Shown piece after piece: positions 4,650 to 58,756 of a stretch of 64,000 nt of DNA (position 1 is the stretch's first letter; each line of letters begins with the position of its first letter). Both the position numbers and the translations under genes were made by a program. The notes beneath the pieces are model-generated. The model was not told the DNA's origin. It saw nothing but the letters and a program-made list of their open reading frames with translations, and ran no database searches. The stretch lies in the IMG/VR virus record IMGVR_UViG_3300044846_005229, positions 1-64,000 of that record, one strand, 5' to 3'.

Positions 4650-6017
4650 TTAGACTCCTTCATAATACATATTGATATACTTACGTGCGTTCTGATTGCT
4701 GACTTTCTCCCATACCCCCCTTCTAAATGATTCTGCCGAATGTTGAATGCCGAATGTTGCTATATCTTTAGCCTCACTCTTCGTCAGTCCGTCTTTTTCC
4801 ATTTCTGTCATCACTTTATTGAAATTCCTTTCCAACACATCAGCTTGTTTGCCTGTCGGGTAATTTGTCATCGCGAAGTTAGTCCCTGTCCATCCACCTA
4901 AAGCTTCAGATAAGGCTGCTTTCCAGTTTTTCTGAGATAACCCCAAATCAACAAACCTGGCCACCCCCTTATCATCAATAATTAAATTATCGCCCTTAGC
5001 ATCATTGTGGGCATACCCTAGTTTATGCAATTTTCCCATAGTGATATTGTAAGCGTCATCTTTGTCAATGCCATTGATCTTTTGAGGGGCCTTGTAAAGG
5101 GGGACTCCTGGAACAACTTCCATAGCAATCATACCTTTGTGGATGGTACCGTTATCCATGTTGCTATGGGCATTCTTTACGAATCTGGAGGCTATTAATT
5201 TGGGGCCCAAACCGACTTCCCCCAGTTTTTTAATTAAGGTAGCCTCAGTTCTACCGATATCCCCAACCTTAACGCCAATTTCATTAGGCATTCCATCCGA
5301 GTATCCAAGTAACTTCTTCGTGGGTATCTTCAGGAATGCTCCATAGCCCCCTGCACCCAATACCCGGGAGCCTGATCCTTCAACTGCGCTCCACTTTACC
5401 TTATCTGCTTTCTCTGAGCCATCAATGCTTATAGTGCCTTCGGGGCCTAGCCTTTTCATTTTGTCTAATAACTTACTGGCGGCTTCTCTGACTTTTCTTA
5501 CCTTATCTGCAGGGATATCACCATTCTTATGGGTAGTCATTGGGGCTGAGGGCCGAGTCCGTGCCACAGTTTCTTTAGGGGTCTTAGGAACTGGTTGATT
5601 CTTTAGTTTCTTGGCAGCATTTATTCTGCCTATAAGGGTGCGAAACCTTTGAATGGCTTGGCCAAAAAATAGTCCCAAGTTGTGTTCTTTGTCTTGAGTT
5701 TGCTTATTTATTGGTGGTGAATTCTTTCCCGTAGGGGGGTTCTTAATTGGGGGATTTTGGACAGGGGTAAAGGCAACTGGTTTGGTAACACCAAAAATCC
5801 TGTCCCTTACTTTTATCAGAGAACCCACAACAACATCAGGCAACTCGATAAGACAAGTCTTCACCCCTTCGATACAAGTTGCTGAGCAGCTTTTACCGAT
5901 AGAGCACCTTTTACGACCACCCCCGACAGCATTTGATTTGGACTTCAGAATCTCAGAACTCGATGGCGCATTGCCGGAGGGTGCCGCAAAGTTGAATTGT
6001 CCTTCACCATTTACCAC
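4650..6017 (-). CDS. Cys4-module protein with C-terminal protein-kinase-like domain (kinase 1)
   Basis: N-terminal CSIGKSCSATCIEGVKTC; kinase motifs GAGGYG (Gly loop), GVKVG (Lys), HNDAKGDN (catalytic loop), FVDLG (DFG-like). Confidence 0.75.
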   Translation of the reverse strand: MVNGEGQFNFAAPSGNAPSSSEILKSKSNAVGGGRKRCSIGKSCSATCIEGVKTCLIELPDVVVGSLIKVRDRIFGVTKPVAFTPVQNPPIKNPPTGKNSPPINKQTQDKEHNLGLFFGQAIQRFRTLIGRINAAKKLKNQPVPKTPKETVARTRPSAPMTTHKNGDIPADKVRKVREAASKLLDKMKRLGPEGTISIDGSEKADKVKWSAVEGSGSRVLGAGGYGAFLKIPTKKLLGYSDGMPNEIGVKVGDIGRTEATLIKKLGEVGLGPKLIASRFVKNAHSNMDNGTIHKGMIAMEVVPGVPLYKAPQKINGIDKDDAYNITMGKLHKLGYAHNDAKGDNLIIDDKGVARFVDLGLSQKNWKAALSEALGGWTGTNFAMTNYPTGKQADVLERNFNKVMTEMEKDGLTKSEAKDIATFGIQHSAESFRRGVWEKVSNQNARKYINMYYEGV

Positions 6018-6026
6018 GCGGTGCCT

Positions 6027-6206
6027 TTAACCCAGATATTGCCAAGCAGTGACTACATCCTCAGATACCAACCCATCAATATCCATCTTTTGAGCAGCGT
6101 CTAGGGCCCTAAGGGATTCAACCCGCTTGGCAGGGTCTCTGCGTAACTTTTTGTAACGCTCCATGAGCTTTTGGTATTTGTCGTCGTTGCTTAGTTGAGA
6201 TGCCAT
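6027..6206 (-). CDS. Small helical protein (59 aa), paralogue of 50001..50168
   Basis: Hand-translated MASQLSNDDKYQKLMERYKKLRRDPAKRVE...; below ORF-track cutoff; shares KYQKLM..YK..RRDPA with the 55-aa ORF at 50001..50168. Confidence 0.65.
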   Translation of the reverse strand: MASQLSNDDKYQKLMERYKKLRRDPAKRVESLRALDAAQKMDIDGLVSEDVVTAWQYLG

Positions 6207-6281
6207 TTGTTATGGGGGAGTTTTGAGTTATCAGGCTGTTAAGCCGCATACACCTATTATACCCCGTGGTCGCTGCCTTTG

Positions 6282-6407
6282 TCAACCTTCCTCTCGGTCT
6301 TCTTCGGATTTGATGAAATCCTTAAGGTCTTTGACATATACGCGAAGATCTTGGGCCTTTTGAAGATGCCAATGTTGTTTAGTTTTCAAGTAAAGCATCA
6401 TGTGGTT
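6282..6407 (-). pseudogene. 3' part of a 67-aa conserved cyanophage-type hypothetical gene interrupted by the IS605 element
   Basis: NHMMLYLKTKQHWHLQKAQDLRVYVKDLKDFIKSEEDREEG*; joins in frame with 7976..8053 when the IS is removed. Confidence 0.8.
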
Positions 6408-6600
6408 TTGACTTCCTCCCCGCCGTGAACGGCGGAGATTCCTTCTACGCTGCGCATGGGGATGCCTCAGCGATCGGGTGGGTTGGCGCTTCACAGCCTG
6501 CTGCCACCAAAGCGGTGGACTGATGCGTGGCTCCACGCCCGTTTCGACCCTCCGCCAGTCCGGCGGCGAGAATGTTCAAGGCAGCGTTGATGTCACGGTC
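6408..6600 (-). ncRNA. Predicted TnpB omegaRNA/reRNA scaffold (3' of tnpB to right end; guide is the flank AACCACATGATGCTTT...)
   Basis: Established for IS605 TnpB systems that the RNA overlaps the tnpB 3' end and right end; hairpins visible; 5' boundary is a guess. Confidence 0.55.
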
Positions 6601-7653
6601 GTGGACCGTTCCGCAGCTCGGGCACTGCCACTCCCGAATCGAAAGATCCTTCTTGCCGTCGTGATGCCCGCAGGTTGAGCACACCTGGCTGGTGGGGGGC
6701 CATCGGTTGATGACCACCACTTCACGCCCGTACTGCTCAGCCTTGGACTCCAGCAGGATCCGCAGCTGACGCCAGCCTGCATCGGCAATCGAGCGGGCCA
6801 GCTTCCTGTTCTTCAGCATCCCCGACACATTCAGGTCTTCCAGCACCACCGTTTGGTTCTCACGGATGAGGCGGGTCGAAAGCTGATGCTGATAGTCGAG
6901 GCGCCGATCGCCAACCTTGGCGTGCAGCTTGGCCACCTTGCGCCTGGCGATTACCAAGCGGTTGGAACCCCGTTGCTTGTGCTTCAGGTTGCGCTGTAGC
7001 CGCCGCAGTCGCTTGAGCGCAGAGCGCAGGAACTTCGGCGGGGCGAGCTTTTCACCGTCAGAAGTGACGGCGAGGGATACCAAGCCTAGGTCGATGCCAA
7101 CCGCCCTGCCATTCGCTGGCAAAGGAGTCGGCTCAATATCCACAACGAAGCTGGCGAAGAATCGCCCACTTGCATCGCGGATGACGGTGACGCTGCTCGG
7201 ATCCGAAGGCAGATCCCGGCTCCACTCAATCGGCACCGGGCCGATCTTGCTGAGCGTCAGCGTCCTCCCCCCTGTGCGGAACACATGGGACATGAAGCAA
7301 ACGGACTGCGCACCACGGCGCTTTTTGAAGCGTGGCGGCTTGACCTTCGCGCCCTTGCGCTTGCCTTTCAGGCTGGCCCACCAGTTGCGGTACGCCTGAT
7401 CGAGGTTGCGCACGGACTGCTGCAGCACCACATTGCTGGGCTCCGCCAGCCACTGCCGCTCTGGCGTCTGCTTGGCCTGCGTGATGCAGAGCTTGGCCAG
7501 GACGGGGTAGCTGGTCTTTTGCCCAGCGGCATACAGCTCACGGCTCTTGGCCAGGGCGTCGTTCCATACCACACGGGCGCAGCCGAACGCACGAGCCAGC
7601 GCCACCTGCTGATGCGGGTGGGGGTAGAGCCGGAAGCGGTAGCGTTGCTTCAT
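6445..7653 (-). CDS. tnpB: RNA-guided endonuclease TnpB
   Basis: MKQRYRFRLYP HTH start; RuvC-I GIDLG, RuvC-II VVLEDLNV, zinc finger CSTC/CPSC, RuvC-III HDRDINAA; all catalytic residues present. Confidence 0.95.
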   Translation of the reverse strand: MKQRYRFRLYPHPHQQVALARAFGCARVVWNDALAKSRELYAAGQKTSYPVLAKLCITQAKQTPERQWLAEPSNVVLQQSVRNLDQAYRNWWASLKGKRKGAKVKPPRFKKRRGAQSVCFMSHVFRTGGRTLTLSKIGPVPIEWSRDLPSDPSSVTVIRDASGRFFASFVVDIEPTPLPANGRAVGIDLGLVSLAVTSDGEKLAPPKFLRSALKRLRRLQRNLKHKQRGSNRLVIARRKVAKLHAKVGDRRLDYQHQLSTRLIRENQTVVLEDLNVSGMLKNRKLARSIADAGWRQLRILLESKAEQYGREVVVINRWPPTSQVCSTCGHHDGKKDLSIREWQCPSCGTVHDRDINAALNILAAGLAEGRNGRGATHQSTALVAAGCEAPTHPIAEASPCAA

Positions 7654-7682
7654 ACCAACCACCATACCAAACTTGGGGTGCA

Positions 7683-7949
7683 ATGGCGCAACCACCGCTT
7701 AGGCGAGGAAGGCACAGCGTTTCTCGGCTTGTCGTTCATTTGGTCTTTGTGGTCAAGTATCGGCGCAAGGCGCTGAGCGGGGCGGCATTGGATCGGATGC
7801 ACGAGGTCTGCCTGGGCATTGCCGAGCGGATGGGCTTCCAGCTGCTTGAGCTGAACGGCGAAGCAGACCATGTGCATCTGCTGGCGGGGCGCCCATCGAG
7901 CGTCTCAGGGAGTATGTGGAGTCTCAGGAAAAGCCGTCCTCAAGGACGG
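7683..7949 (+). pseudogene. tnpA: IS200-type Y1 transposase remnant (internal deletion plus frameshift)
   Basis: N-terminal ...HLVFVVKYRR...ADHVHLL (HUH) fused at ~7882/7883 to an out-of-frame C-terminal GGAPIERLREYVESQ (catalytic Tyr helix); the central part is missing. Confidence 0.85.
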
Positions 7950-7975
7950 GGTTTGTGTCCCAGAACAGCCCCGTT

Positions 7976-8053
7976 ATCAATGGCTTTAAGCAAGCTATGA
8001 ATTACTGGGTTCCACGGGCCCCTTATTGGGTTATCCCATTCTCTTTTTGACAT
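7976..8053 (-). pseudogene. 5' part of the IS-interrupted hypothetical gene
   Basis: MSKREWDNPIRGPWNPVIHSLLKAID, ending exactly at the TTGAT target. Confidence 0.8.
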
Positions 8054-51406: not shown

Positions 51407-52039
51407 TTACCCAATTTGCTCTTTGTCGTTGTATTCCCCGTCTTCATCTTCATCATCTTCATCATCATCGTCGTCCTCATCATCATTACCGTCTTCATCA
51501 CTACCTTCGCTAAGGATCTCATCGATTAGGGTATCAATTTCATCTTCATTTAGTTCTTCTTCCCCTTCGACTTCGGACTCCCCATAAGGGTCTTCTTCGT
51601 ATTGAGTTTCGTTGTCGTTGTCGTCAGAGTCACTTTCTGCGTCATCGTCAGAATCGCCCTCATCCGAACCCCAAATCTCTTCAGAAAGGCGTTCAAATTC
51701 TTCATCGGTTAGGAATGTTGAGTTTTCATCTGAATCTTTAATATCATCGGCATCTTCGGCATCGTCATCAACTTCACCGGCACCATCGTCTGGGCTAGCC
51801 GGAAAATAATCGTCGGGATTGAATGGCTGGTTGGGTTTAAAGTCACGGGACATACCATCATTAGCCTTCCAAAGCCCGGTATGCTGAATCCAGGGAGAGG
51901 TATTATGGACTACGTTAGTTGGCAACCCATTAATAGGGTCAATTTCGTGATCTTCAGGGTTTGACAATTGAGCTGCATAAGCTGCGCGGAAAGCTTCAAT
52001 GGCATCCTGTTCAAAATCGCCGTTGATTCTATTCGTCAT
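51407..52039 (-). CDS. Highly acidic protein (Asp/Glu-rich C-terminal half)
   Basis: DDEDDDDDEDDEDEDGEY tracts; N-terminal FEQDAIEAF. Confidence 0.65.
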   Translation of the reverse strand: MTNRINGDFEQDAIEAFRAAYAAQLSNPEDHEIDPINGLPTNVVHNTSPWIQHTGLWKANDGMSRDFKPNQPFNPDDYFPASPDDGAGEVDDDAEDADDIKDSDENSTFLTDEEFERLSEEIWGSDEGDSDDDAESDSDDNDNETQYEEDPYGESEVEGEEELNEDEIDTLIDEILSEGSDEDGNDDEDDDDDEDDEDEDGEYNDKEQIG

Positions 52040-54070: not shown

Positions 54071-54892
54071 TTAAGCTTCGTATGCCTCCAAGATTTCTGC
54101 TATGATGCCGTTCCTGACGATGTCCCCTCTTTCAAATTTAACTCTCCCCACCCCTCTAATGGAGGAAAGCCGGTGATAGCAATCTAAAAGTCCATTTTCA
54201 GGTTTAAATACATCTAAGTCAATTTGCCTTGTGTCACCTGTAATGACAACTTTCGAGTCTTTTCCAACCCTACTGAGGACGGTTTTAACATTTTCTGGTA
54301 ATGAGTTTTGGGCCTCATCAAAAAGAATTAGGCACTCATTTAGTGATCTCCCCCTCAAATCCTCTAGGAGTGTGGGTTCTACAATCTTTTTATCTACAAG
54401 GTAATCCGCAGCCCCCTTGCTTCTAGTCATTACAACCAAATTGTCATAAACAGGTCCCACCAGTGGCTTCATTTTTTCTTCCAGGGTTCCAGGAAGAGCC
54501 CCCCTATTTCTTTGGTGAGAACAGCCTACGTCACTTCTAATGTAATAAATTTTTTGAATGTTACCCTTAGAAATTTCACTTAATCCCCACCATAGCGCCA
54601 CTAAGGTTTTTCCAACTCCTGATGGGCCTATAGCAATGGTGACTGTATTCTTATTTAAAGAAGACCACAAGTCCTCCTGATGGTTTGTTTTCGGGTAAAA
54701 GGGTAGAACATCCATTCCCCTATAAGAGTGCTCAACCATTTGGGCGGACTCTGCGCGGCGCGATTTGCGCTTGTCTTTTGATCTCAACATTTGGTAAAGA
54801 GGGTTAATGACAACTGTGGATAACGTGTATGCTTCGTTGCTAATTTGGATTACATGGTCCTCACCCCCTTCTAAACTAATAGGCAGAGTCAT
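54071..54892 (-). CDS. phoH: PhoH-family ATPase
   Basis: GPSGVGKT, LPGTLEEKMKP, LRGRSL, DEAQN, TGDTRQID, DIVRNG. Confidence 0.93.
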   Translation of the reverse strand: MTLPISLEGGEDHVIQISNEAYTLSTVVINPLYQMLRSKDKRKSRRAESAQMVEHSYRGMDVLPFYPKTNHQEDLWSSLNKNTVTIAIGPSGVGKTLVALWWGLSEISKGNIQKIYYIRSDVGCSHQRNRGALPGTLEEKMKPLVGPVYDNLVVMTRSKGAADYLVDKKIVEPTLLEDLRGRSLNECLILFDEAQNSLPENVKTVLSRVGKDSKVVITGDTRQIDLDVFKPENGLLDCYHRLSSIRGVGRVKFERGDIVRNGIIAEILEAYEA

Positions 54893-54937: not shown

Positions 54938-54959
54938 AAAAAGCCCCCGTTAGAGGGCT
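54938..54959 (-). terminator. Rho-independent terminator
   Basis: AGCCCTC-TAAC-GGGGGCT followed by TTTT on minus strand, just before the GGGTAAA motif of phoH. Confidence 0.6.
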
Positions 54960-55011: not shown

Positions 55012-55215
55012 TCATTCATGGACCCTTTCGACGAATAAGTCAAATCCATTAGCGCCACCACACCATCGGGAGTAGGAGTCTTTCGGGATTGTGTATTGGG
55101 GTCTTTTTTTCGCTTGATCAAGGTACTTATCCGAGGCAAGGTCTGTAATGAGGCAACGAGTGCCGTGAAGCTCCTGCATGATAGCAGGGTTTTTGTCAGT
55201 TGGTGAAATAGCCAT
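55012..55215 (-). CDS. Small hypothetical protein
   Basis: 67-aa frame preferred over overlapping 54966..55277 on composition; uncertain. Confidence 0.4.
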   Translation of the reverse strand: MAISPTDKNPAIMQELHGTRCLITDLASDKYLDQAKKRPQYTIPKDSYSRWCGGANGFDLFVERVHE

Positions 55216-55273: not shown

Positions 55274-56692
55274 TCATGTGACGGTGGGTAGTAGTTGACT
55301 GTAGCTAACTAAGATTGCACATAGGGTGTCGGACGGGGGCCCCAATGGAATCTGGGGGTCATCACATCTATTCAAAGTGCTTTGGATATTGGGATTGGAA
55401 GATTTCACTCTCCCTGAGTCTAGCATATGGGAGATAGCGTTTAATGTGGGTTGCCTCGGCTTGCTACCTACGCAAACCTCTAACCCCAAACCCCGTAGGT
55501 ACACAGTCCAAGCTGCACTTGCCATGGCGGATTCAAGTACAATTTCTTCCGCTCCGTATGCCTTAACTGCTAGACTTAGGATTACTCCGACAGTTTTCAA
55601 GTCCCAATTGCCTTCGTAAGTGTCAAGAACATACATGTAGTCTCTTCCCCTTGTAACCCCTGCGATGCAAATACCCGTTTTATCAATGTTGTCGGCACTG
55701 AAAGCAGGATCAACAGAAATAATTACTTTATCTAATGGAGGGATTTCTGGTGTCGGTGAGCATCCCTTATAGAGCCAGGAGAACTTTTCATCTCCTATGT
55801 TTCTTTTGAGGTCTTTCAAATTTTCGGGGGACTGGTATTGGTTGGCATTTCCTAAGGTTCCCCCAATGGGCCTGCCCAGAATGTCAGCCTCTGCCTCTTC
55901 TTTACTTTCAATAATTGCTGACAGATTAATGTGGACGGCTCCTTTTGGGTTTGATACGGGGTCAAAGACACCGAATTTATCTAAGAAGTAGCCGAAAATG
56001 TCTTCATCACCCCATCTTGACCCAAGAACAACAATGGCACTGTTTTGGTGGCGCCGGGTCATAATTTCCTCTTCTATCCAATCTTTATTCACTGTTATAT
56101 CCGAGGACTTGTGATAGTCATCGATCAACCAGACCCCAGGCACTTTAGAATCGGGATTGATGTTCCCATAAGCAAACCCACATACAGAGCCCCCAGGAGC
56201 AGACGGCACGACATGATAAGGATCCAGGTCAATTTTAGAAAAAATTTCCTCAAAAAGTGGATTATTAACCTCTTGCTTCACCCTATTTGCCGTCACCTTT
56301 GCAAGACTTTGGTTGTAAGAAGTTACGAAATTATTAGTATAAGGATCTTTCCCCAGGAGCCAAGACAGAAATAGGGAGCCCAATGTAGACTTCCCAGTAC
56401 GAGGAGGCATCGATACTAAGAGGATTGGGTACCTGCCTTCGGCAATGTCTTCAAAGGCGGACCCCAAGACTTCATAAGTTTCCCAGTTCAGCAGGGAGCC
56501 AAACTTTACTTGAGCGGAACGAGACAAATAGGCAGGAAAACTATATTGGGCGCACTCTTTAATGTAGTCATTAATTATTTCCTTAGTCGCGCCTCTCATT
56601 ACAAGTTCAAGAAGTCCCCTCCTATACTTTCTCCAGCTTGAATGTTCCGATAGCTGGGAAGAGTGTGTTATTTTTGGGTGTTTTGGTGTCAT
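55274..56692 (-). CDS. Terminase large subunit paralogue (shorter, possibly degenerate)
   Basis: SMPPRTGKS Walker A, WLIDD Walker B, GSRW motif III, ISVDPAFS nuclease Asp; terminal HDDxVD motif replaced by PSDTLCA. Confidence 0.75.
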   Translation of the reverse strand: MTPKHPKITHSSQLSEHSSWRKYRRGLLELVMRGATKEIINDYIKECAQYSFPAYLSRSAQVKFGSLLNWETYEVLGSAFEDIAEGRYPILLVSMPPRTGKSTLGSLFLSWLLGKDPYTNNFVTSYNQSLAKVTANRVKQEVNNPLFEEIFSKIDLDPYHVVPSAPGGSVCGFAYGNINPDSKVPGVWLIDDYHKSSDITVNKDWIEEEIMTRRHQNSAIVVLGSRWGDEDIFGYFLDKFGVFDPVSNPKGAVHINLSAIIESKEEAEADILGRPIGGTLGNANQYQSPENLKDLKRNIGDEKFSWLYKGCSPTPEIPPLDKVIISVDPAFSADNIDKTGICIAGVTRGRDYMYVLDTYEGNWDLKTVGVILSLAVKAYGAEEIVLESAMASAAWTVYLRGLGLEVCVGSKPRQPTLNAISHMLDSGRVKSSNPNIQSTLNRCDDPQIPLGPPSDTLCAILVSYSQLLPTVT

Positions 56693-56747
56693 TTTAGTTA
56701 AGATTTTGTTGGCTTGTGTTGGCTTGTGTTGATTTTTTTACCGGGGG

Positions 56748-58478
56748 TCAGAGCGATAACCCATAACCAGTGTCATCCCTGTTGAGGCGAGGTCTGGAAA
56801 AAGAGTCTGGACCGATAAAACCAGAACCAGAATCTAAATTATTGTAAAGTCCAGCCGAGGGTAAATTCCTCCCTACTCTACCAGTAGGTAAATTCGAATC
56901 ACCCAGGAATGGCCTTCTGTTTCCTCCGTTCCACCTCCTCGCTTGTATTATAGCATCTTGTACCCCACGGTCAACGGTGTCTAGCTTCATCGCATAGTAC
57001 GTCAGGGACCACACAAACGCATCCACCGAGTCATCGTGCTTAACGAAGGGGAATCCTGTTAGCTCCTTAATAAAACTATCCACCCATAACCCCTCAACGA
57101 GTTTAACCCTATCATTCTCTAGAAGTGGACAAACAGCTTCGAGTCTAACCGTTTTTGACCTAAGGGGTCTCATTTCTTCTACAGGTATTTTTGTTTCCCG
57201 TCTCAACATTTGTATCAAAGATTGGCCGGATGCTGCCTTTTCGATACAGATTACTTTTGGTTTGTAGAAGGAATGTAGTTGCTTAATAGATGCAATCAAA
57301 TCAGGGAAGCCCCATCTCCCTTTAACGATTTCCCTAATGTAAACAGTTCGGGGGTCCCTAGTTGAAATGCCAGCCACACAGACCGCAGTTTCGTCTGCAC
57401 CTTCTTTTTCAGAAAATGCACAGTCTACACCTAGCCATACTACATCTAGTGGTGGGCACTTTTCTTCTTCTATCCTAACTATCCACCCAGCCTTTACAAT
57501 TTGACCTTCTGCTGCAGTTGGAGTCCCTTGATAAAGGGCCGCAAATTTGGAACTGCCCATAGTTTTCTTTTGGGCTTCCAGCATATCAACCGAGAATGCC
57601 GGGTTATCAGGCCAATGGGACTCACCGATTTGCCTGCCTAAGGGGTCATCGACAGGGTCTTCACACAGGCCCGCAATATTCACCCATCTCCAACCTTCTG
57701 GGTTTTCTTCCTCATCATAGCTACCGTCCGATTCTAAAACCTGGCCATGCAAATCATTGGCATGAAACCTGGTCGCAATAATTAGACGGCAATAATTGTT
57801 AGTTTTACGTGTCGATGCCTCTTCTTGCCACCACGTTTGGAGACTCTCAAAAGCCCTGGCAGAAGCTGAGCTTTTCAGTGGGTCGTCGATTACCATGGCC
57901 CCCACACCTGGGCTAATAATGTTTACAGACCCTGCCGTATGGCCAGTCAACACACCACCGACAGAAGTAGGCAGGATGTATCCGCCACTAAGCATCTCAA
58001 ATTTAGAGTCCCTAGCAAAACCTTTCCAATCAGGGAAGATTTTCTTAAAGACAGGTGTCTTCAACATGCCGATAACTTCCTTATGGAACTTATTGGACAG
58101 TGATAAACCATAAGAGGCAATAACGTGTTGAGTTTCTTGATCTCTTCCTAGTAACCAAGCCACAAACATCGACGCCAGCATTGATTTACCAGATCGAGGG
58201 GGACAGGATACGATCAAGTTATGGTAGCGTTTATTTGCTAGATCCTCAAAACCACTGGCAATAATTTCATGGAAATCCGCGACTTTTAACGCACCACCCT
58301 TCATCAAGTCTGCAAAGGCCAGGAAACAATACCTGGAAGACTCAAACATGTAGTTCTGAATGACAGAGTTTGGTGCTTCTAAGACATTAAGATGATGTAA
58401 ACCCCTAATGTAATGGCGCCATGAGCTGTGTTCATCTAGTTGACTAGCGTGGTTTATTATCGGCCGTGGGAGTGTCAT
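56748..58478 (-). CDS. terL: Terminase large subunit
   Basis: SCPPRSGKS, MVIDDP, ATRFH, LGVDCAFS, IEKAASG, FPFVKHDDSVDA. Confidence 0.9.
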   Translation of the reverse strand: MTLPRPIINHASQLDEHSSWRHYIRGLHHLNVLEAPNSVIQNYMFESSRYCFLAFADLMKGGALKVADFHEIIASGFEDLANKRYHNLIVSCPPRSGKSMLASMFVAWLLGRDQETQHVIASYGLSLSNKFHKEVIGMLKTPVFKKIFPDWKGFARDSKFEMLSGGYILPTSVGGVLTGHTAGSVNIISPGVGAMVIDDPLKSSASARAFESLQTWWQEEASTRKTNNYCRLIIATRFHANDLHGQVLESDGSYDEEENPEGWRWVNIAGLCEDPVDDPLGRQIGESHWPDNPAFSVDMLEAQKKTMGSSKFAALYQGTPTAAEGQIVKAGWIVRIEEEKCPPLDVVWLGVDCAFSEKEGADETAVCVAGISTRDPRTVYIREIVKGRWGFPDLIASIKQLHSFYKPKVICIEKAASGQSLIQMLRRETKIPVEEMRPLRSKTVRLEAVCPLLENDRVKLVEGLWVDSFIKELTGFPFVKHDDSVDAFVWSLTYYAMKLDTVDRGVQDAIIQARRWNGGNRRPFLGDSNLPTGRVGRNLPSAGLYNNLDSGSGFIGPDSFSRPRLNRDDTGYGLSL

Positions 58479-58756
58479 ACTTGAGGTTTAAACTTCTTAA
58501 TGAGTTCAGCCGCAGTACCTATATACTCCTTAGTGAGTTCCTTCTCAGACTTACTTTCACCTTCTGTCAAAGCAGCCGTATCGGAAATGAAATCCCTATG
58601 GGCTTTAACGGAAAAGTTAAAAATTTTCACTAAATCGTCAGTACTACACTCCTCCAAAGAAGCCTGGATAATGGTCAAGGAGTCCTCAGCTACTTGTAAA
58701 GTCCTGAGAGCTAGCTTTTCCTTTTGACGTAGAATTTTTTCATTTTGATTCATCAT
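58475..58756 (-). CDS. Hypothetical helical protein, candidate terminase small subunit
   Basis: 93 aa, overlapping terL start; positional inference only. Confidence 0.35.
   Translation of the reverse strand: MMNQNEKILRQKEKLALRTLQVAEDSLTIIQASLEECSTDDLVKIFNFSVKAHRDFISDTAALTEGESKSEKELTKEYIGTAAELIKKFKPQV

What the first reader, a model, noticed from the sequence alone, without database searches (positions are those of the whole stretch)
55274..58478. Tandem duplicated terminase large subunits, one apparently degenerate
Both start H(A/S)SQL(D/S)EHSSWR.Y.RGL and keep Walker A (PPR(S/T)GKS), Walker B and the first nuclease Asp. The downstream copy is ~100 aa shorter and replaces HDDSVDA with PSDTLCA, yet its ORF is intact over 472 codons. 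Phages normally carry one terL. The second may be a regulatory or hetero-oligomeric motor subunit, a neofunctionalised ATPase, or a decoy for host sensors that recognise terminases (e.g. Avs-type); these roles are inference.
Basis: partly seen in the sequence, partly recalled or inferred. Interest (0 to 1): 0.65.

Follow-up and report, generated by a model that had tools for sequence, protein, structure and literature searches.

The report
Tail-less second terminase beside terL
A ~279-kb lake-water phage carries, right after its normal DNA-packaging enzyme gene (terL), an old, faster-evolving but intact second copy; it keeps the ATPase and nuclease catalytic residues but lacks the C-terminal tail, so it looks like a working accessory enzyme of unknown role, not a dead duplicate.

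Summary
Two adjacent minus-strand genes, TerL1 (56748-58478, 576 aa) and TerL2 (55274-56692, 472 aa), are paralogous large terminases (32% identity, E 1e-65). "Degenerate" is not supported. TerL2 is intact in every full-length copy, across 18 IMG/VR loci and about 33 protein clusters at 51-100% identity. Its dN/dS is 0.2-0.4 against 0.03-0.07 for TerL1, and 0.03-0.11 in its ATPase core. It folds as a full two-domain terminase. It keeps Walker A Lys, Walker B DD, the motif III Arg and all three nuclease carboxylates (D328, E387, D455) in at least 34 of 35 homologues. In PSDTLCA the retained Asp is the one that maps to the metal-binding Asp of G20c/P74-26 TerL. The changed last Asp position is Met in P74-26, so it is not catalytic. 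What TerL2 truly lacks is TerL1's roughly 80-100-residue C-terminal extension. It shares TerL1's conserved N-terminal motif. The gene is absent from S-CBWM1 and several relatives, has moved between lineages by recombination, and contains a hypervariable segment (residues 137-191). My best reading is a functional accessory terminase that works off the portal. Mixed-motor, defence-decoy and selfish-nuclease readings remain open.

The parts
56748..58478 (-). terL1: canonical large terminase, 576 aa. Walker A at 58182-58208, nuclease D352 at 57423-57425, E413 at 57240-57242, HDDSVDA at 57018-57038.
   Evidence: phrog_38 at E 2.9e-81; Pfam Terminase_6C at 1.1e-18, above its cutoff. 54% identical to the S-CBWM1 terminase. 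dN/dS 0.03-0.07.
56751..56981 (-). TerL1 C-terminal extension (residues 500-576). It is predicted disordered from residue 513 and ends in a conserved G(Y/W)D-type motif. It has no counterpart in TerL2.
   Evidence: AF2 pLDDT is about 30 for residues 513-576. Tail alignment. TerL2 ends 17 residues after D455.
56693..56747 (-). 55-nt spacer between terL1 and terL2, with the direct repeat CAACACAAGC x2. There is no terminator-like site on this strand.
55274..56692 (-). terL2: tail-less paralogue of the large terminase, 472 aa.
   Evidence: AF2 model pLDDT 84.4. Foldseek best hits are solved large terminases (E 1e-16 to 1e-6).
56603..56692 (-). TerL2 N-terminal motif (residues 1-30), shared with TerL1 at 53-73% identity against 33% overall.
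   Evidence: Only 9 of 19 identical residues use the same codon, so the similarity comes from protein-level constraint, not gene conversion.
56387..56413 (-). TerL2 Walker A, SMPPRTGKS (residues 94-102).
   Evidence: K101 is conserved in 34 of 35 homologues. Windowed dN/dS here is 0.03.
56117..56134 (-). TerL2 Walker B, VWLIDD (residues 187-192).
   Evidence: D191 and D192 are each conserved in 36 of 37.
56120..56284 (-). Hypervariable, mosaic segment of TerL2 (residues 137-191), lying between Walker A and Walker B.
   Evidence: Mean dN 0.40-0.56 and dS above 1 here, against dS 0.1-0.2 in neighbouring windows. Column conservation is 0.53-0.61, against 0.76-0.88 for the same stretch of TerL1.
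55709..55711 (-). TerL2 nuclease Asp D328, at the end of strand beta-1.
   Evidence: Conserved in 35 of 35. DSSP strand 320-328.
55532..55534 (-). TerL2 nuclease Glu E387, equivalent to P74-26/G20c D347.
   Evidence: Conserved in 34 of 35. hhalign register.
55316..55336 (-). PSDTLCA (residues 453-459). D455 at 55328-55330 is equivalent to the metal-A Asp; C458 at 55319-55321 is a non-catalytic position.
   Evidence: D455 is conserved in 34 of 34. C458 is C in 21, D in 6, S in 4 and Y in 3. The helix starts at D455. P74-26 has HDDIVMS at this place.
55012..55215 (-). o67: conserved 67-aa gene (phrog_1414, like S-CBWM1 gp104). It follows terL2 here and follows terL1 directly in relatives that lack terL2.
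54944..54956 (-). Terminator-like hairpin plus T-run after o67. It is one of two terminator-like sites the scan lists on this strand, and the only one that lies between genes; the other (57303-57321) is inside terL1.
   Evidence: consensus scan only
58475..58756 (-). g93: 93-aa helical ORF that overlaps the terL1 start (like S-CBWM1 gp102). This is the usual position of a small terminase, but its function is unassigned.
   Evidence: No family hit.
54071..54892 (-). phoH-like gene. It marks the downstream edge of the conserved block.
   Evidence: phrog_170 at E 6.8e-61.

Best explanation
TerL2 is a functional accessory paralogue of the large terminase. It arose by an old duplication of terL within the S-CBWM1-like (Aokuangvirus-related) lineage of freshwater phages, and selection has kept it in a subset of them, including this ~279-kb phage. 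It is a complete two-domain enzyme: an ASCE ATPase plus a RuvC/RNase H-like nuclease with the catalytic residues intact. It keeps the N-terminal module it shares with TerL1; in P22 and lambda the TerL N-terminus is where the small terminase binds. It has lost TerL1's long disordered C-terminal extension; in P22, T3 and lambda the C-terminal tail docks TerL on the portal. It also varies freely in the segment between Walker A and B that is rigidly conserved in TerL1. I therefore infer that TerL2 works off the portal, using the same N-terminal partner as TerL1. In this reading it is a DNA-processing or regulatory subunit of packaging (for example concatemer cutting or initiation, or tuning of TerL1), not a translocating motor subunit. 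It is probably co-transcribed with terL1 and o67. Shown here: paralogy, intactness, purifying selection, conserved catalytic residues, the terminase fold, the missing tail, the patchy and recombining distribution. Inferred: enzymatic activity, the identity of the N-terminal partner, the loss of portal docking, and the role in DNA processing.
For: Paralogy: BLASTP E 1e-65; hhalign 100% probability over TerL1 1-464 against TerL2 1-439. Intactness: every full-length copy is an open frame, in 18 IMG/VR loci, and there are about 33 clusters at 51-100% identity on contigs up to 282 kb. Selection: TerL2 dN/dS is 0.20-0.40 overall, 0.03 around Walker A and 0.07-0.11 for residues 211-270, and no window exceeds 1. 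Catalytic residues: K101 34/35, D191 36/37, D192 36/37, R226 37/37, D328 35/35, E387 34/35, D455 34/34. Fold: AF2 pLDDT 84.4; Foldseek top hits are the PhiV-1, HK97, T4, D6E and Sf6 terminases, and for the nuclease part SPP1, G20c and RuvC. Nuclease mapping: the last helix starts at D455 in TerL2 and at D483 in TerL1; G20c D294, D347 and D429 are indispensable and HDD = 427-429 (PMC5389553); hhalign puts E387 on D347 and D455 on D429. Missing tail: TerL1 residues 513-576 are disordered and have no TerL2 counterpart; the P22 TerL C-tail is needed for portal binding, as reported for T3 and lambda (PMC5290284). Shared N-terminus: 53-73% identity against 33% overall, without shared codons; TerS binds the TerL N-terminus in P22 and lambda (PMC9611059). 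Operon: there is no terminator-like site on this strand between terL1 and terL2, and one follows o67. Contigs from RNA libraries cover both genes and the junction.
Against: No activity, interaction or expression has been demonstrated. The RNA-library contigs may be DNA carry-over. The His and first Asp of HDD, and the D300-equivalent acidic residue, are lost in TerL2; mutating the first two lowers G20c nuclease activity, so the nuclease could be weak. The DNA-contacting stretch after E387 is poorly conserved. Single natural variants carry Walker A K>R (P0014), E387K (P0024) or D191N (P0033), so catalysis may be dispensable in some lineages. The alignment to P74-26 is not statistically significant on its own (E 0.35). 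The portal-docking role of TerL1's tail and the TerS-binding role of the N-terminus are taken from other phages. No TerS has been identified here, and the co-fold of g93 with TerL2 gave no verdict. Absence of the gene in S-CBWM1 and other relatives shows it is not essential for packaging in this lineage.
Confidence: 0.45

Rival explanations
1. TerL2 is a subunit of a mixed motor. It co-assembles with TerL1 into hetero-oligomeric rings on the portal, and TerL1 supplies the docking tails.
For: Both paralogues keep the ATPase core. The genes are adjacent and probably co-transcribed. The conserved TerL2-specific C-terminus LVSYSQLLP could be an interaction motif.
Against: The stretch between Walker A and B is almost invariant in TerL1, but in TerL2 it is hypervariable and even partly deleted in P0014. 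In ring terminases that stretch holds subunit-interface and DNA-gripping residues; I state this from general knowledge and did not map it here. Relatives package DNA without TerL2. TerL2 has swapped between TerL1 backgrounds that are only 63% identical, which is hard to reconcile with a co-adapted ring interface.
Confidence: 0.15
2. TerL2 is a counter-defence protein: a terminase look-alike that occupies or misleads host sensors of terminases (Avs1-3, Upx and similar) or other TerL-directed defences.
For: It behaves like an accessory gene. Its dN/dS is roughly 3- to 10-fold higher than TerL1's. It is present or absent among relatives. It has been exchanged between lineages (TerL2 dS 0.24 against saturated TerL1 dS for L009 versus L017; incongruent trees). 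It has a hypervariable patch. Avs3 recognises terminase active-site residues and bound ATP (PMC13601566), so a mimic would need to keep exactly the residues that TerL2 keeps. Its best structural match is a terminase solved in complex with Avs3, though that only reflects what has been solved.
Against: Binding of a terminase-like protein activates Avs sensors rather than blocking them. The T4 TerL-ATPase paralogue vs.8 is toxic when co-expressed with Avs2, and the authors call such triggering counterproductive for the phage. No window has dN/dS above 1. The conserved TerS-type N-terminal motif is not needed for a decoy. There is no match to defence or anti-defence models in PADLOC. No host or host defence repertoire is known.
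Confidence: 0.12
3. TerL2 is a selfish or inter-phage-competition nuclease. In this reading it is a terminase-derived endonuclease that, like free-standing homing endonucleases next to conserved phage genes, cuts co-infecting relatives that lack it and spreads by recombinational repair.
For: It always sits at the same site, between the highly conserved terL1 and o67, and relatives have clean 'empty' sites. Its distribution across the TerL1 tree is patchy, with at least two separate clades. There is evidence of lateral exchange together with flanking o67. The nuclease triad is intact. A further partial duplication exists at the same locus in L058.
Against: The ATPase core and N-terminal motif are under strong purifying selection, which a homing nuclease would not need. 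It is large and long-lived (members down to 51% identity are all intact), whereas homing genes usually decay. No target site or co-conversion tract has been shown.
Confidence: 0.1
4. TerL2 is a redundant or decaying duplicate with no function of its own.
For: Pfam terminase models fall below their thresholds. The C-terminal motif region cannot be aligned by hhalign. Constraint is relaxed relative to TerL1. The gene is dispensable in relatives.
Against: No stop codon or frameshift occurs in any full-length copy, across about 33 clusters spanning 51-100% identity. dN/dS is well below 1 everywhere. Catalytic residues are nearly invariant. The structure model is confident.
Confidence: 0.03

Closest known systems
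Canonical large terminases (TerL) of tailed phages, e.g. Thermus phages G20c/P74-26, T7-like PhiV-1, HK97, T4 gp17; the nearest cultured relative is Synechococcus phage S-CBWM1 gp103
   Same: The two-domain architecture is the same: an N-terminal ASCE ATPase (Walker A, Walker B, motif III) and a C-terminal RuvC/RNase H-like nuclease with three metal-binding carboxylates. There is significant PHROG and Foldseek similarity. The lineage-specific N-terminal motif is shared with TerL1 and with S-CBWM1 TerL.
   Different: It is a second copy in the genome. It lacks the C-terminal extension that TerL1 has. The His and first Asp of the HDD motif are lost. Pfam terminase models score below their gathering thresholds. 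It evolves faster, its Walker A-B interval is hypervariable, and it is not universal even within its own phage lineage.
[quoted passage not shown]
   Same: It is a lineage-restricted paralogue of the phage's own terminase, it keeps Walker A and B, and its function is unknown. It shows that extra terminase-like proteins exist in large myoviruses and can be seen by terminase sensors.
   Different: [quoted passage not shown] No sequence relationship to vs.8 was tested here.
Tandem 'two large terminase homologs' reported in Xanthomonas jumbo phages XaC1 and XbC2 (PMC11273794)
   Same: Two adjacent terL homologues in jumbo phages, with no small terminase identified.
   Different: They are only mentioned in a genome description. 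It is not known whether they are full-length paralogues or halves of a split gene, as in phiPDS1. I did not compare the sequences.

Membership tests
Large terminase subunit (TerL) superfamily | N-terminal ASCE P-loop ATPase with Walker A Lys, Walker B acidic pair and motif III | tested here: met
   The motifs are SMPPRTGKS, VWLIDD and GSR. Conservation is K101 34/35, D191 36/37, D192 36/37, R226 37/37. phrog_4758 and phrog_38 hit over this region.
Large terminase subunit (TerL) superfamily | C-terminal RNase H/RuvC-like nuclease fold with three metal-binding carboxylates | tested here: met
   The AF2 model has the expected strand/helix order. D328 ends beta-1, E387 follows beta-4 and D455 starts the last helix. 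Foldseek hits include the SPP1 G2P, G20c and HCMV UL89 nucleases and RuvC. The three residues are conserved in at least 34 of 35. The residue mapping to G20c rests on a weak hhalign alignment plus helix position.
Large terminase subunit (TerL) superfamily | Significant match to curated terminase family models | tested here: inconclusive
   PHROG phrog_38 matches at E 3.8e-27. Pfam Terminase_6N (13.2 bits against cutoff 22) and Terminase-T7_RNaseH-like (16.5 against 27) fall below their gathering scores, and Terminase_6C does not hit. NCBIfam termin_lrg_T7 scores 38.7 against 150. TerL1 passes Terminase_6C.
Large terminase subunit (TerL) superfamily | Auxiliary nuclease residues of the HDD motif (G20c H427 and D428) and the D300-equivalent acidic residue | tested here: not met
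   TerL2 has (P/-)S where TerL1 has H-D, and a variable A/P/S where TerL1 has the invariant E357. In G20c, H427A and D428N/A lower nuclease activity without abolishing it, and D300N has no effect.
Packaging-motor TerL (functional definition) | C-terminal extension or tail able to dock on the portal, as in P22, T3 and lambda | tested here: not met
   TerL2 ends 17 residues after D455. TerL1 continues for about 90 residues, including a disordered tail with a conserved terminal motif. That this tail docks on the portal in this phage is inferred from PMC5290284.
Packaging-motor TerL (functional definition) | ATP-driven DNA translocation and headful or site-specific cleavage, demonstrated | not testable with these tools
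   Needs biochemistry or genetics.
Anti-defence decoy or sponge proteins | Direct binding to a host immune sensor that inhibits it | not tested
   No host or sensor is known. PADLOC gives no hit, but that library holds defence models, not anti-defence models.

The most novel reading that the evidence does not exclude
The terminase has been split by sub-functionalisation in a clade of freshwater jumbo phages. In this reading TerL1 is the portal-docked translocase. TerL2 is a free, small-terminase-associated cutting or initiation enzyme whose hypervariable surface is shaped by conflict, either with host terminase sensors or with co-infecting relatives. That would make it the first natural case in which the two jobs of a phage terminase are divided between paralogues.
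Probability: 0.2. Interest if true: 0.8.

Novelty: new variant of a known kind. Interest (0 to 1): 0.55.

Why it matters
TerL is the hallmark single-copy gene of tailed phages. It is used as a phylogenetic marker, a target of bacterial pattern-recognition immunity, and the model for viral packaging motors. A conserved, catalytically intact second TerL without the C-terminal tail is a natural separation-of-function variant. It could show whether cutting and translocation can be carried out by different proteins, how TerS, TerL and the portal interact, and whether phages deploy terminase look-alikes in conflicts with host sensors or rival phages. Practically, it warns that terL-based counting and phylogeny of metagenomic phages can be confounded: TerL2 has no Pfam annotation, sits on a very long branch, and recombines between lineages.

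Tried and rejected
1. phmmer of TerL1 and TerL2, and an HMM of the TerL2 family, against PDB sequences gave nothing usable. Residue mapping therefore relied on AF2 secondary structure, the G20c paper and a weak hhalign alignment to P74-26 TerL.

2. hhalign of the TerL1 family against the TerL2 family stops at 464/439, so the C-terminal motif is not alignable by profile. MAFFT put D455 under D486. I rejected that register in favour of D455 = D483 for three reasons: both residues start the last helix, basal TerL2s read SDIMDA, and the P74-26 alignment agrees.

3. Complex prediction of TerL2(1-315) with the 93-aa upstream ORF returned 'no answer' (score 0.01). This is evidence neither for nor against binding.

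4. Gene conversion as the cause of the similar N-termini is rejected: synonymous sites differ.

5. An apparent insertion in TerL1 of L033 and L054 was only TerL1 and TerL2 hits merged into one.

6. The 279-kb relative as a concatemer is rejected: it has only one copy of each gene.

7. Positive selection: no 40-codon window has dN/dS above 1. No site-model test was run.

8. PADLOC gave no defence-family hit.

9. The careful IQ-TREE run did not finish, so the quick tree (SH-aLRT supports) is used.

10. The exhaustive 1.84-billion-protein profile search was not run, following the operators' cost note. Statements about how far the TerL2 family extends therefore rest on the word-index search, IMG/VR and cultured phages.

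No alternative genetic code was used.
Full report
**What is there**

The minus strand of the window carries two adjacent ORFs. TerL1 is at 56748-58478 (576 aa). TerL2 is at 55274-56692 (472 aa). They are separated by 55 nt and lie in different frames.

- The two proteins are 32% identical over 465 residues, E 1e-65.
- Both match PHROG phrog_38 'terminase large subunit', at 2.9e-81 and 3.8e-27.
- Only TerL1 passes a Pfam terminase model (Terminase_6C). TerL2 stays below every Pfam gathering score.

**Genomic setting**

The window belongs to a 110-kb IMG/VR virus record. A contig with identical sequence over the locus is 279,339 bp long, has terminal repeats and is rated 100% complete. It contains exactly one TerL1 and one TerL2. 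This is therefore a jumbo phage, not a concatemer or a chimera.

Near-identical DNA is found in lake-water metagenomes from many studies.

The nearest cultured phage is Synechococcus phage S-CBWM1 (139 kb). Its TerL is 54% identical to TerL1 and 29% identical to TerL2. It has a single terL in the syntenic block gp101-gp102-terL-gp104-phoH. In the window the order is g410, g93, terL1, terL2, o67 (gp104-like, phrog_1414), phoH.

There is no terminator-like site on this strand between terL1 and terL2, and one follows o67.

Contigs from four metatranscriptomic libraries (three studies) lie on both genes, and one spans the junction. DNA carry-over cannot be excluded.

**Distribution and history**

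- TerL2 orthologues occur directly downstream of TerL1 in 18 IMG/VR loci.
- They form about 33 clusters (at 90% identity) that are 51-100% identical to the window's copy. All are unannotated, on contigs up to 282 kb.
- Every full-length copy is an open frame.
- Relatives L031, L032, L034, L036, L041, L047, L048 and S-CBWM1 lack TerL2. In them terL1 is followed directly by the o67 homologue.
- In a maximum-likelihood tree (quick search) TerL2 is monophyletic with support 100. It sits on a very long stem (2.8 substitutions per site) outside the whole TerL1 + S-CBWM1 clade (support 99).
- The TerL1s that are accompanied by TerL2 fall into two separate, well-supported clades.
- The TerL2 tree does not match the TerL1 tree. 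L009's TerL2 groups with those of L017 and L021 (support 100), although the TerL1s of those genomes are only 63% identical.
- Synonymous divergence agrees with this. For L009 versus L017, TerL2 dS is 0.24 and TerL1 dS is saturated.

The duplication is therefore old. TerL2 has since been lost repeatedly, exchanged between lineages by recombination, or both. The lineage-specific N-terminal motif is shared by TerL1, TerL2 and S-CBWM1 TerL but not by S-TIM5 or other outgroups. This argues for an origin within this lineage.

Duplicated terL is rare in cultured phages. Of 2012 records matching TerL1, one has two matching places.

**Is TerL2 degenerate? No.**

*Selection.*
- Pairwise dN/dS is 0.20-0.40 for TerL2 and 0.03-0.07 for TerL1.
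- Within TerL2, windowed dN/dS is 0.03 around Walker A and 0.07-0.11 for residues 211-270.
- No window exceeds 1.

*Catalytic residues.* Among 37 TerL2 sequences:

| Residue | Role | Conserved |
|---|---|---|
| K101 | Walker A Lys | 34/35 |
| D191 | Walker B | 36/37 |
| D192 | Walker B | 36/37 |
| R226 | motif III Arg | 37/37 |
| D328 | nuclease carboxylate | 35/35 |
| E387 | nuclease carboxylate | 34/35 |
| D455 | nuclease carboxylate | 34/34 |

*Fold.* The AlphaFold2 model (pLDDT 84.4) is a complete two-domain terminase. Its best Foldseek matches are the PhiV-1, HK97, T4, D6E and Sf6 terminases. For the C-terminal domain they are the SPP1, G20c and HCMV nucleases and RuvC.

*The PSDTLCA motif.*
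- In G20c TerL the motif is H427-D428-D429. D294, D347 and D429 are indispensable metal ligands. H427 and D428 mutants keep reduced activity (PMC5389553).
- In the models, the last nuclease helix begins at D483 (the second Asp of HDD) in TerL1 and at D455 in TerL2.
- hhalign of the TerL2 family against P74-26 TerL is weak (E 0.35) but in register. It pairs E387 with D347, S454 with D428, D455 with D429 and C458 with M432.
- The Asp retained in PSDTLCA is therefore the essential one.
- The D-to-C change concerns a position that is Met in P74-26 and varies C/D/S/Y among TerL2s.

*What has been lost.*
- The His and first Asp of HDD.
- The acidic residue five positions after the first catalytic Asp.
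- Conservation of the stretch after E387.

The nuclease may therefore be weaker or have altered specificity, but its metal site is preserved.

**What really distinguishes TerL2**

1. It lacks TerL1's C-terminal extension. TerL1 continues for about 90 residues beyond the equivalent of TerL2's end. This includes a disordered tail (residues 513-576, pLDDT about 30) that ends in a conserved G(Y/W)D-type motif. In P22, and as reported for T3 and lambda, the TerL C-terminal tail is required for portal binding (PMC5290284).

2. It shares TerL1's N-terminal motif. Identity there is 53-73%, against 33% overall. Only 9 of 19 identical residues use the same codon, so this is protein-level constraint, not gene conversion. 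In P22 and lambda the TerL N-terminus is the small-terminase binding site (PMC9611059).

3. Residues 137-191, between Walker A and B, are hypervariable and mosaic in TerL2 (dN 0.4-0.56, dS above 1). The same stretch is almost invariant in TerL1.

4. TerL2 has its own invariant C-terminal LVSYSQLLP.

**Interpretation**

The best-supported reading is a functional accessory terminase that keeps catalysis and the N-terminal partner site but no longer docks on the portal. It would act off the portal in DNA processing or in regulation of packaging.

Paralogy, intactness, selection, fold, conserved residues and the missing tail are shown. Activity, partners and role are inferred.

Rivals:
- a mixed TerL1/TerL2 motor;
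- a mimic aimed at terminase-sensing immunity;
- a selfish or competitive nuclease;
- a decaying duplicate, which is essentially excluded.

On the mimic rival, Avs3 reads terminase active-site residues and bound ATP, and the T4 TerL-ATPase paralogue vs.8 is toxic with Avs2 (PMC13601566). This cuts both ways, because binding normally activates the sensor.

**Comparison with what is known**

TerL2 is a member of the TerL superfamily by fold and motifs, but it is not a typical packaging TerL. The closest precedents are:
- T4 vs.8, described as homologous to the terminase ATPase domain, function unknown;
- an unstudied note of tandem terL homologues in Xanthomonas jumbo phages (PMC11273794).

Other reported 'two terminase' cases are split genes. 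I rate it a new variant of a known kind.

**Limits**

- There is no biochemical or genetic evidence.
- The host is unknown.
- The residue mapping to solved nucleases is indirect.
- The tree is a quick search.
- The exhaustive protein search was not run.
- The single co-fold attempt gave no verdict.

Noticed in passing
L058:1110-3362 (Logan contig, 3493 nt): In a relative whose TerL1 is 81% identical, the gene after terL1 is a 750-aa ORF. It consists of a TerL2-like ATPase domain (without the N-terminal motif) fused in frame to a complete TerL2-like protein. This would be a further partial duplication at the same locus. It is a single contig, so an assembly join cannot be excluded.
   Followed up: partly
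window 55012-55215 (-), and homologues in most loci: The conserved 67-aa protein after terL2 (phrog_1414, S-CBWM1 gp104-like) ends in CGGxxG(F/W)D(L/D)(F/Y)xER. This resembles the conserved G(Y/W)D(L/T)x(L/F) end of the TerL1 tail. It could be chance or a shared docking motif.
   Followed up: no
window 6445-7695 (-), within the GC-rich stretch about 6001-8000: A 416-aa ORF matches the TnpB / IS605 OrfB domains (HTH_OrfB_IS605, OrfB_IS605, Cas12f1-like TNB). It lies in a 2-kb island of 58.7% GC in a genome that is otherwise 42-49% GC. This is probably an inserted transposon-type element.
   Followed up: partly
window 56693-56747 (-): The terL1-terL2 spacer contains the tandem direct repeat CAACACAAGC x2, followed by CAACAAAA, and has no obvious Shine-Dalgarno sequence. 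One RNA-library contig shows small insertions here in a related strain.
   Followed up: no
window 54071-54892 (-) and downstream to about 51400: The region downstream of terL1 is mosaic among near-identical phages. The phoH-like gene is 78-100% identical and the neighbouring small genes 72-100% identical, in genomes whose structural genes and TerL1 are 98-99% identical.
   Followed up: partly
window 51407-52039 (-): A 210-aa protein whose C-terminal half is an extremely acidic Asp/Glu-rich low-complexity tail.
   Followed up: no
P0014, P0024, P0033 (TerL2 homologues on other contigs): Single natural TerL2 variants carry changes at catalytic positions. P0014 has Walker A PPCTGRS (K>R) plus a 12-residue deletion, on a 272-kb contig. 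P0024 has E387K and P0033 has D191N.
   Followed up: no
window 4650-6017 (-): A 455-aa ORF has a weak, sub-threshold protein-kinase match (E 4e-4). S-CBWM1 encodes a RIO-like kinase near its terL block.
   Followed up: no
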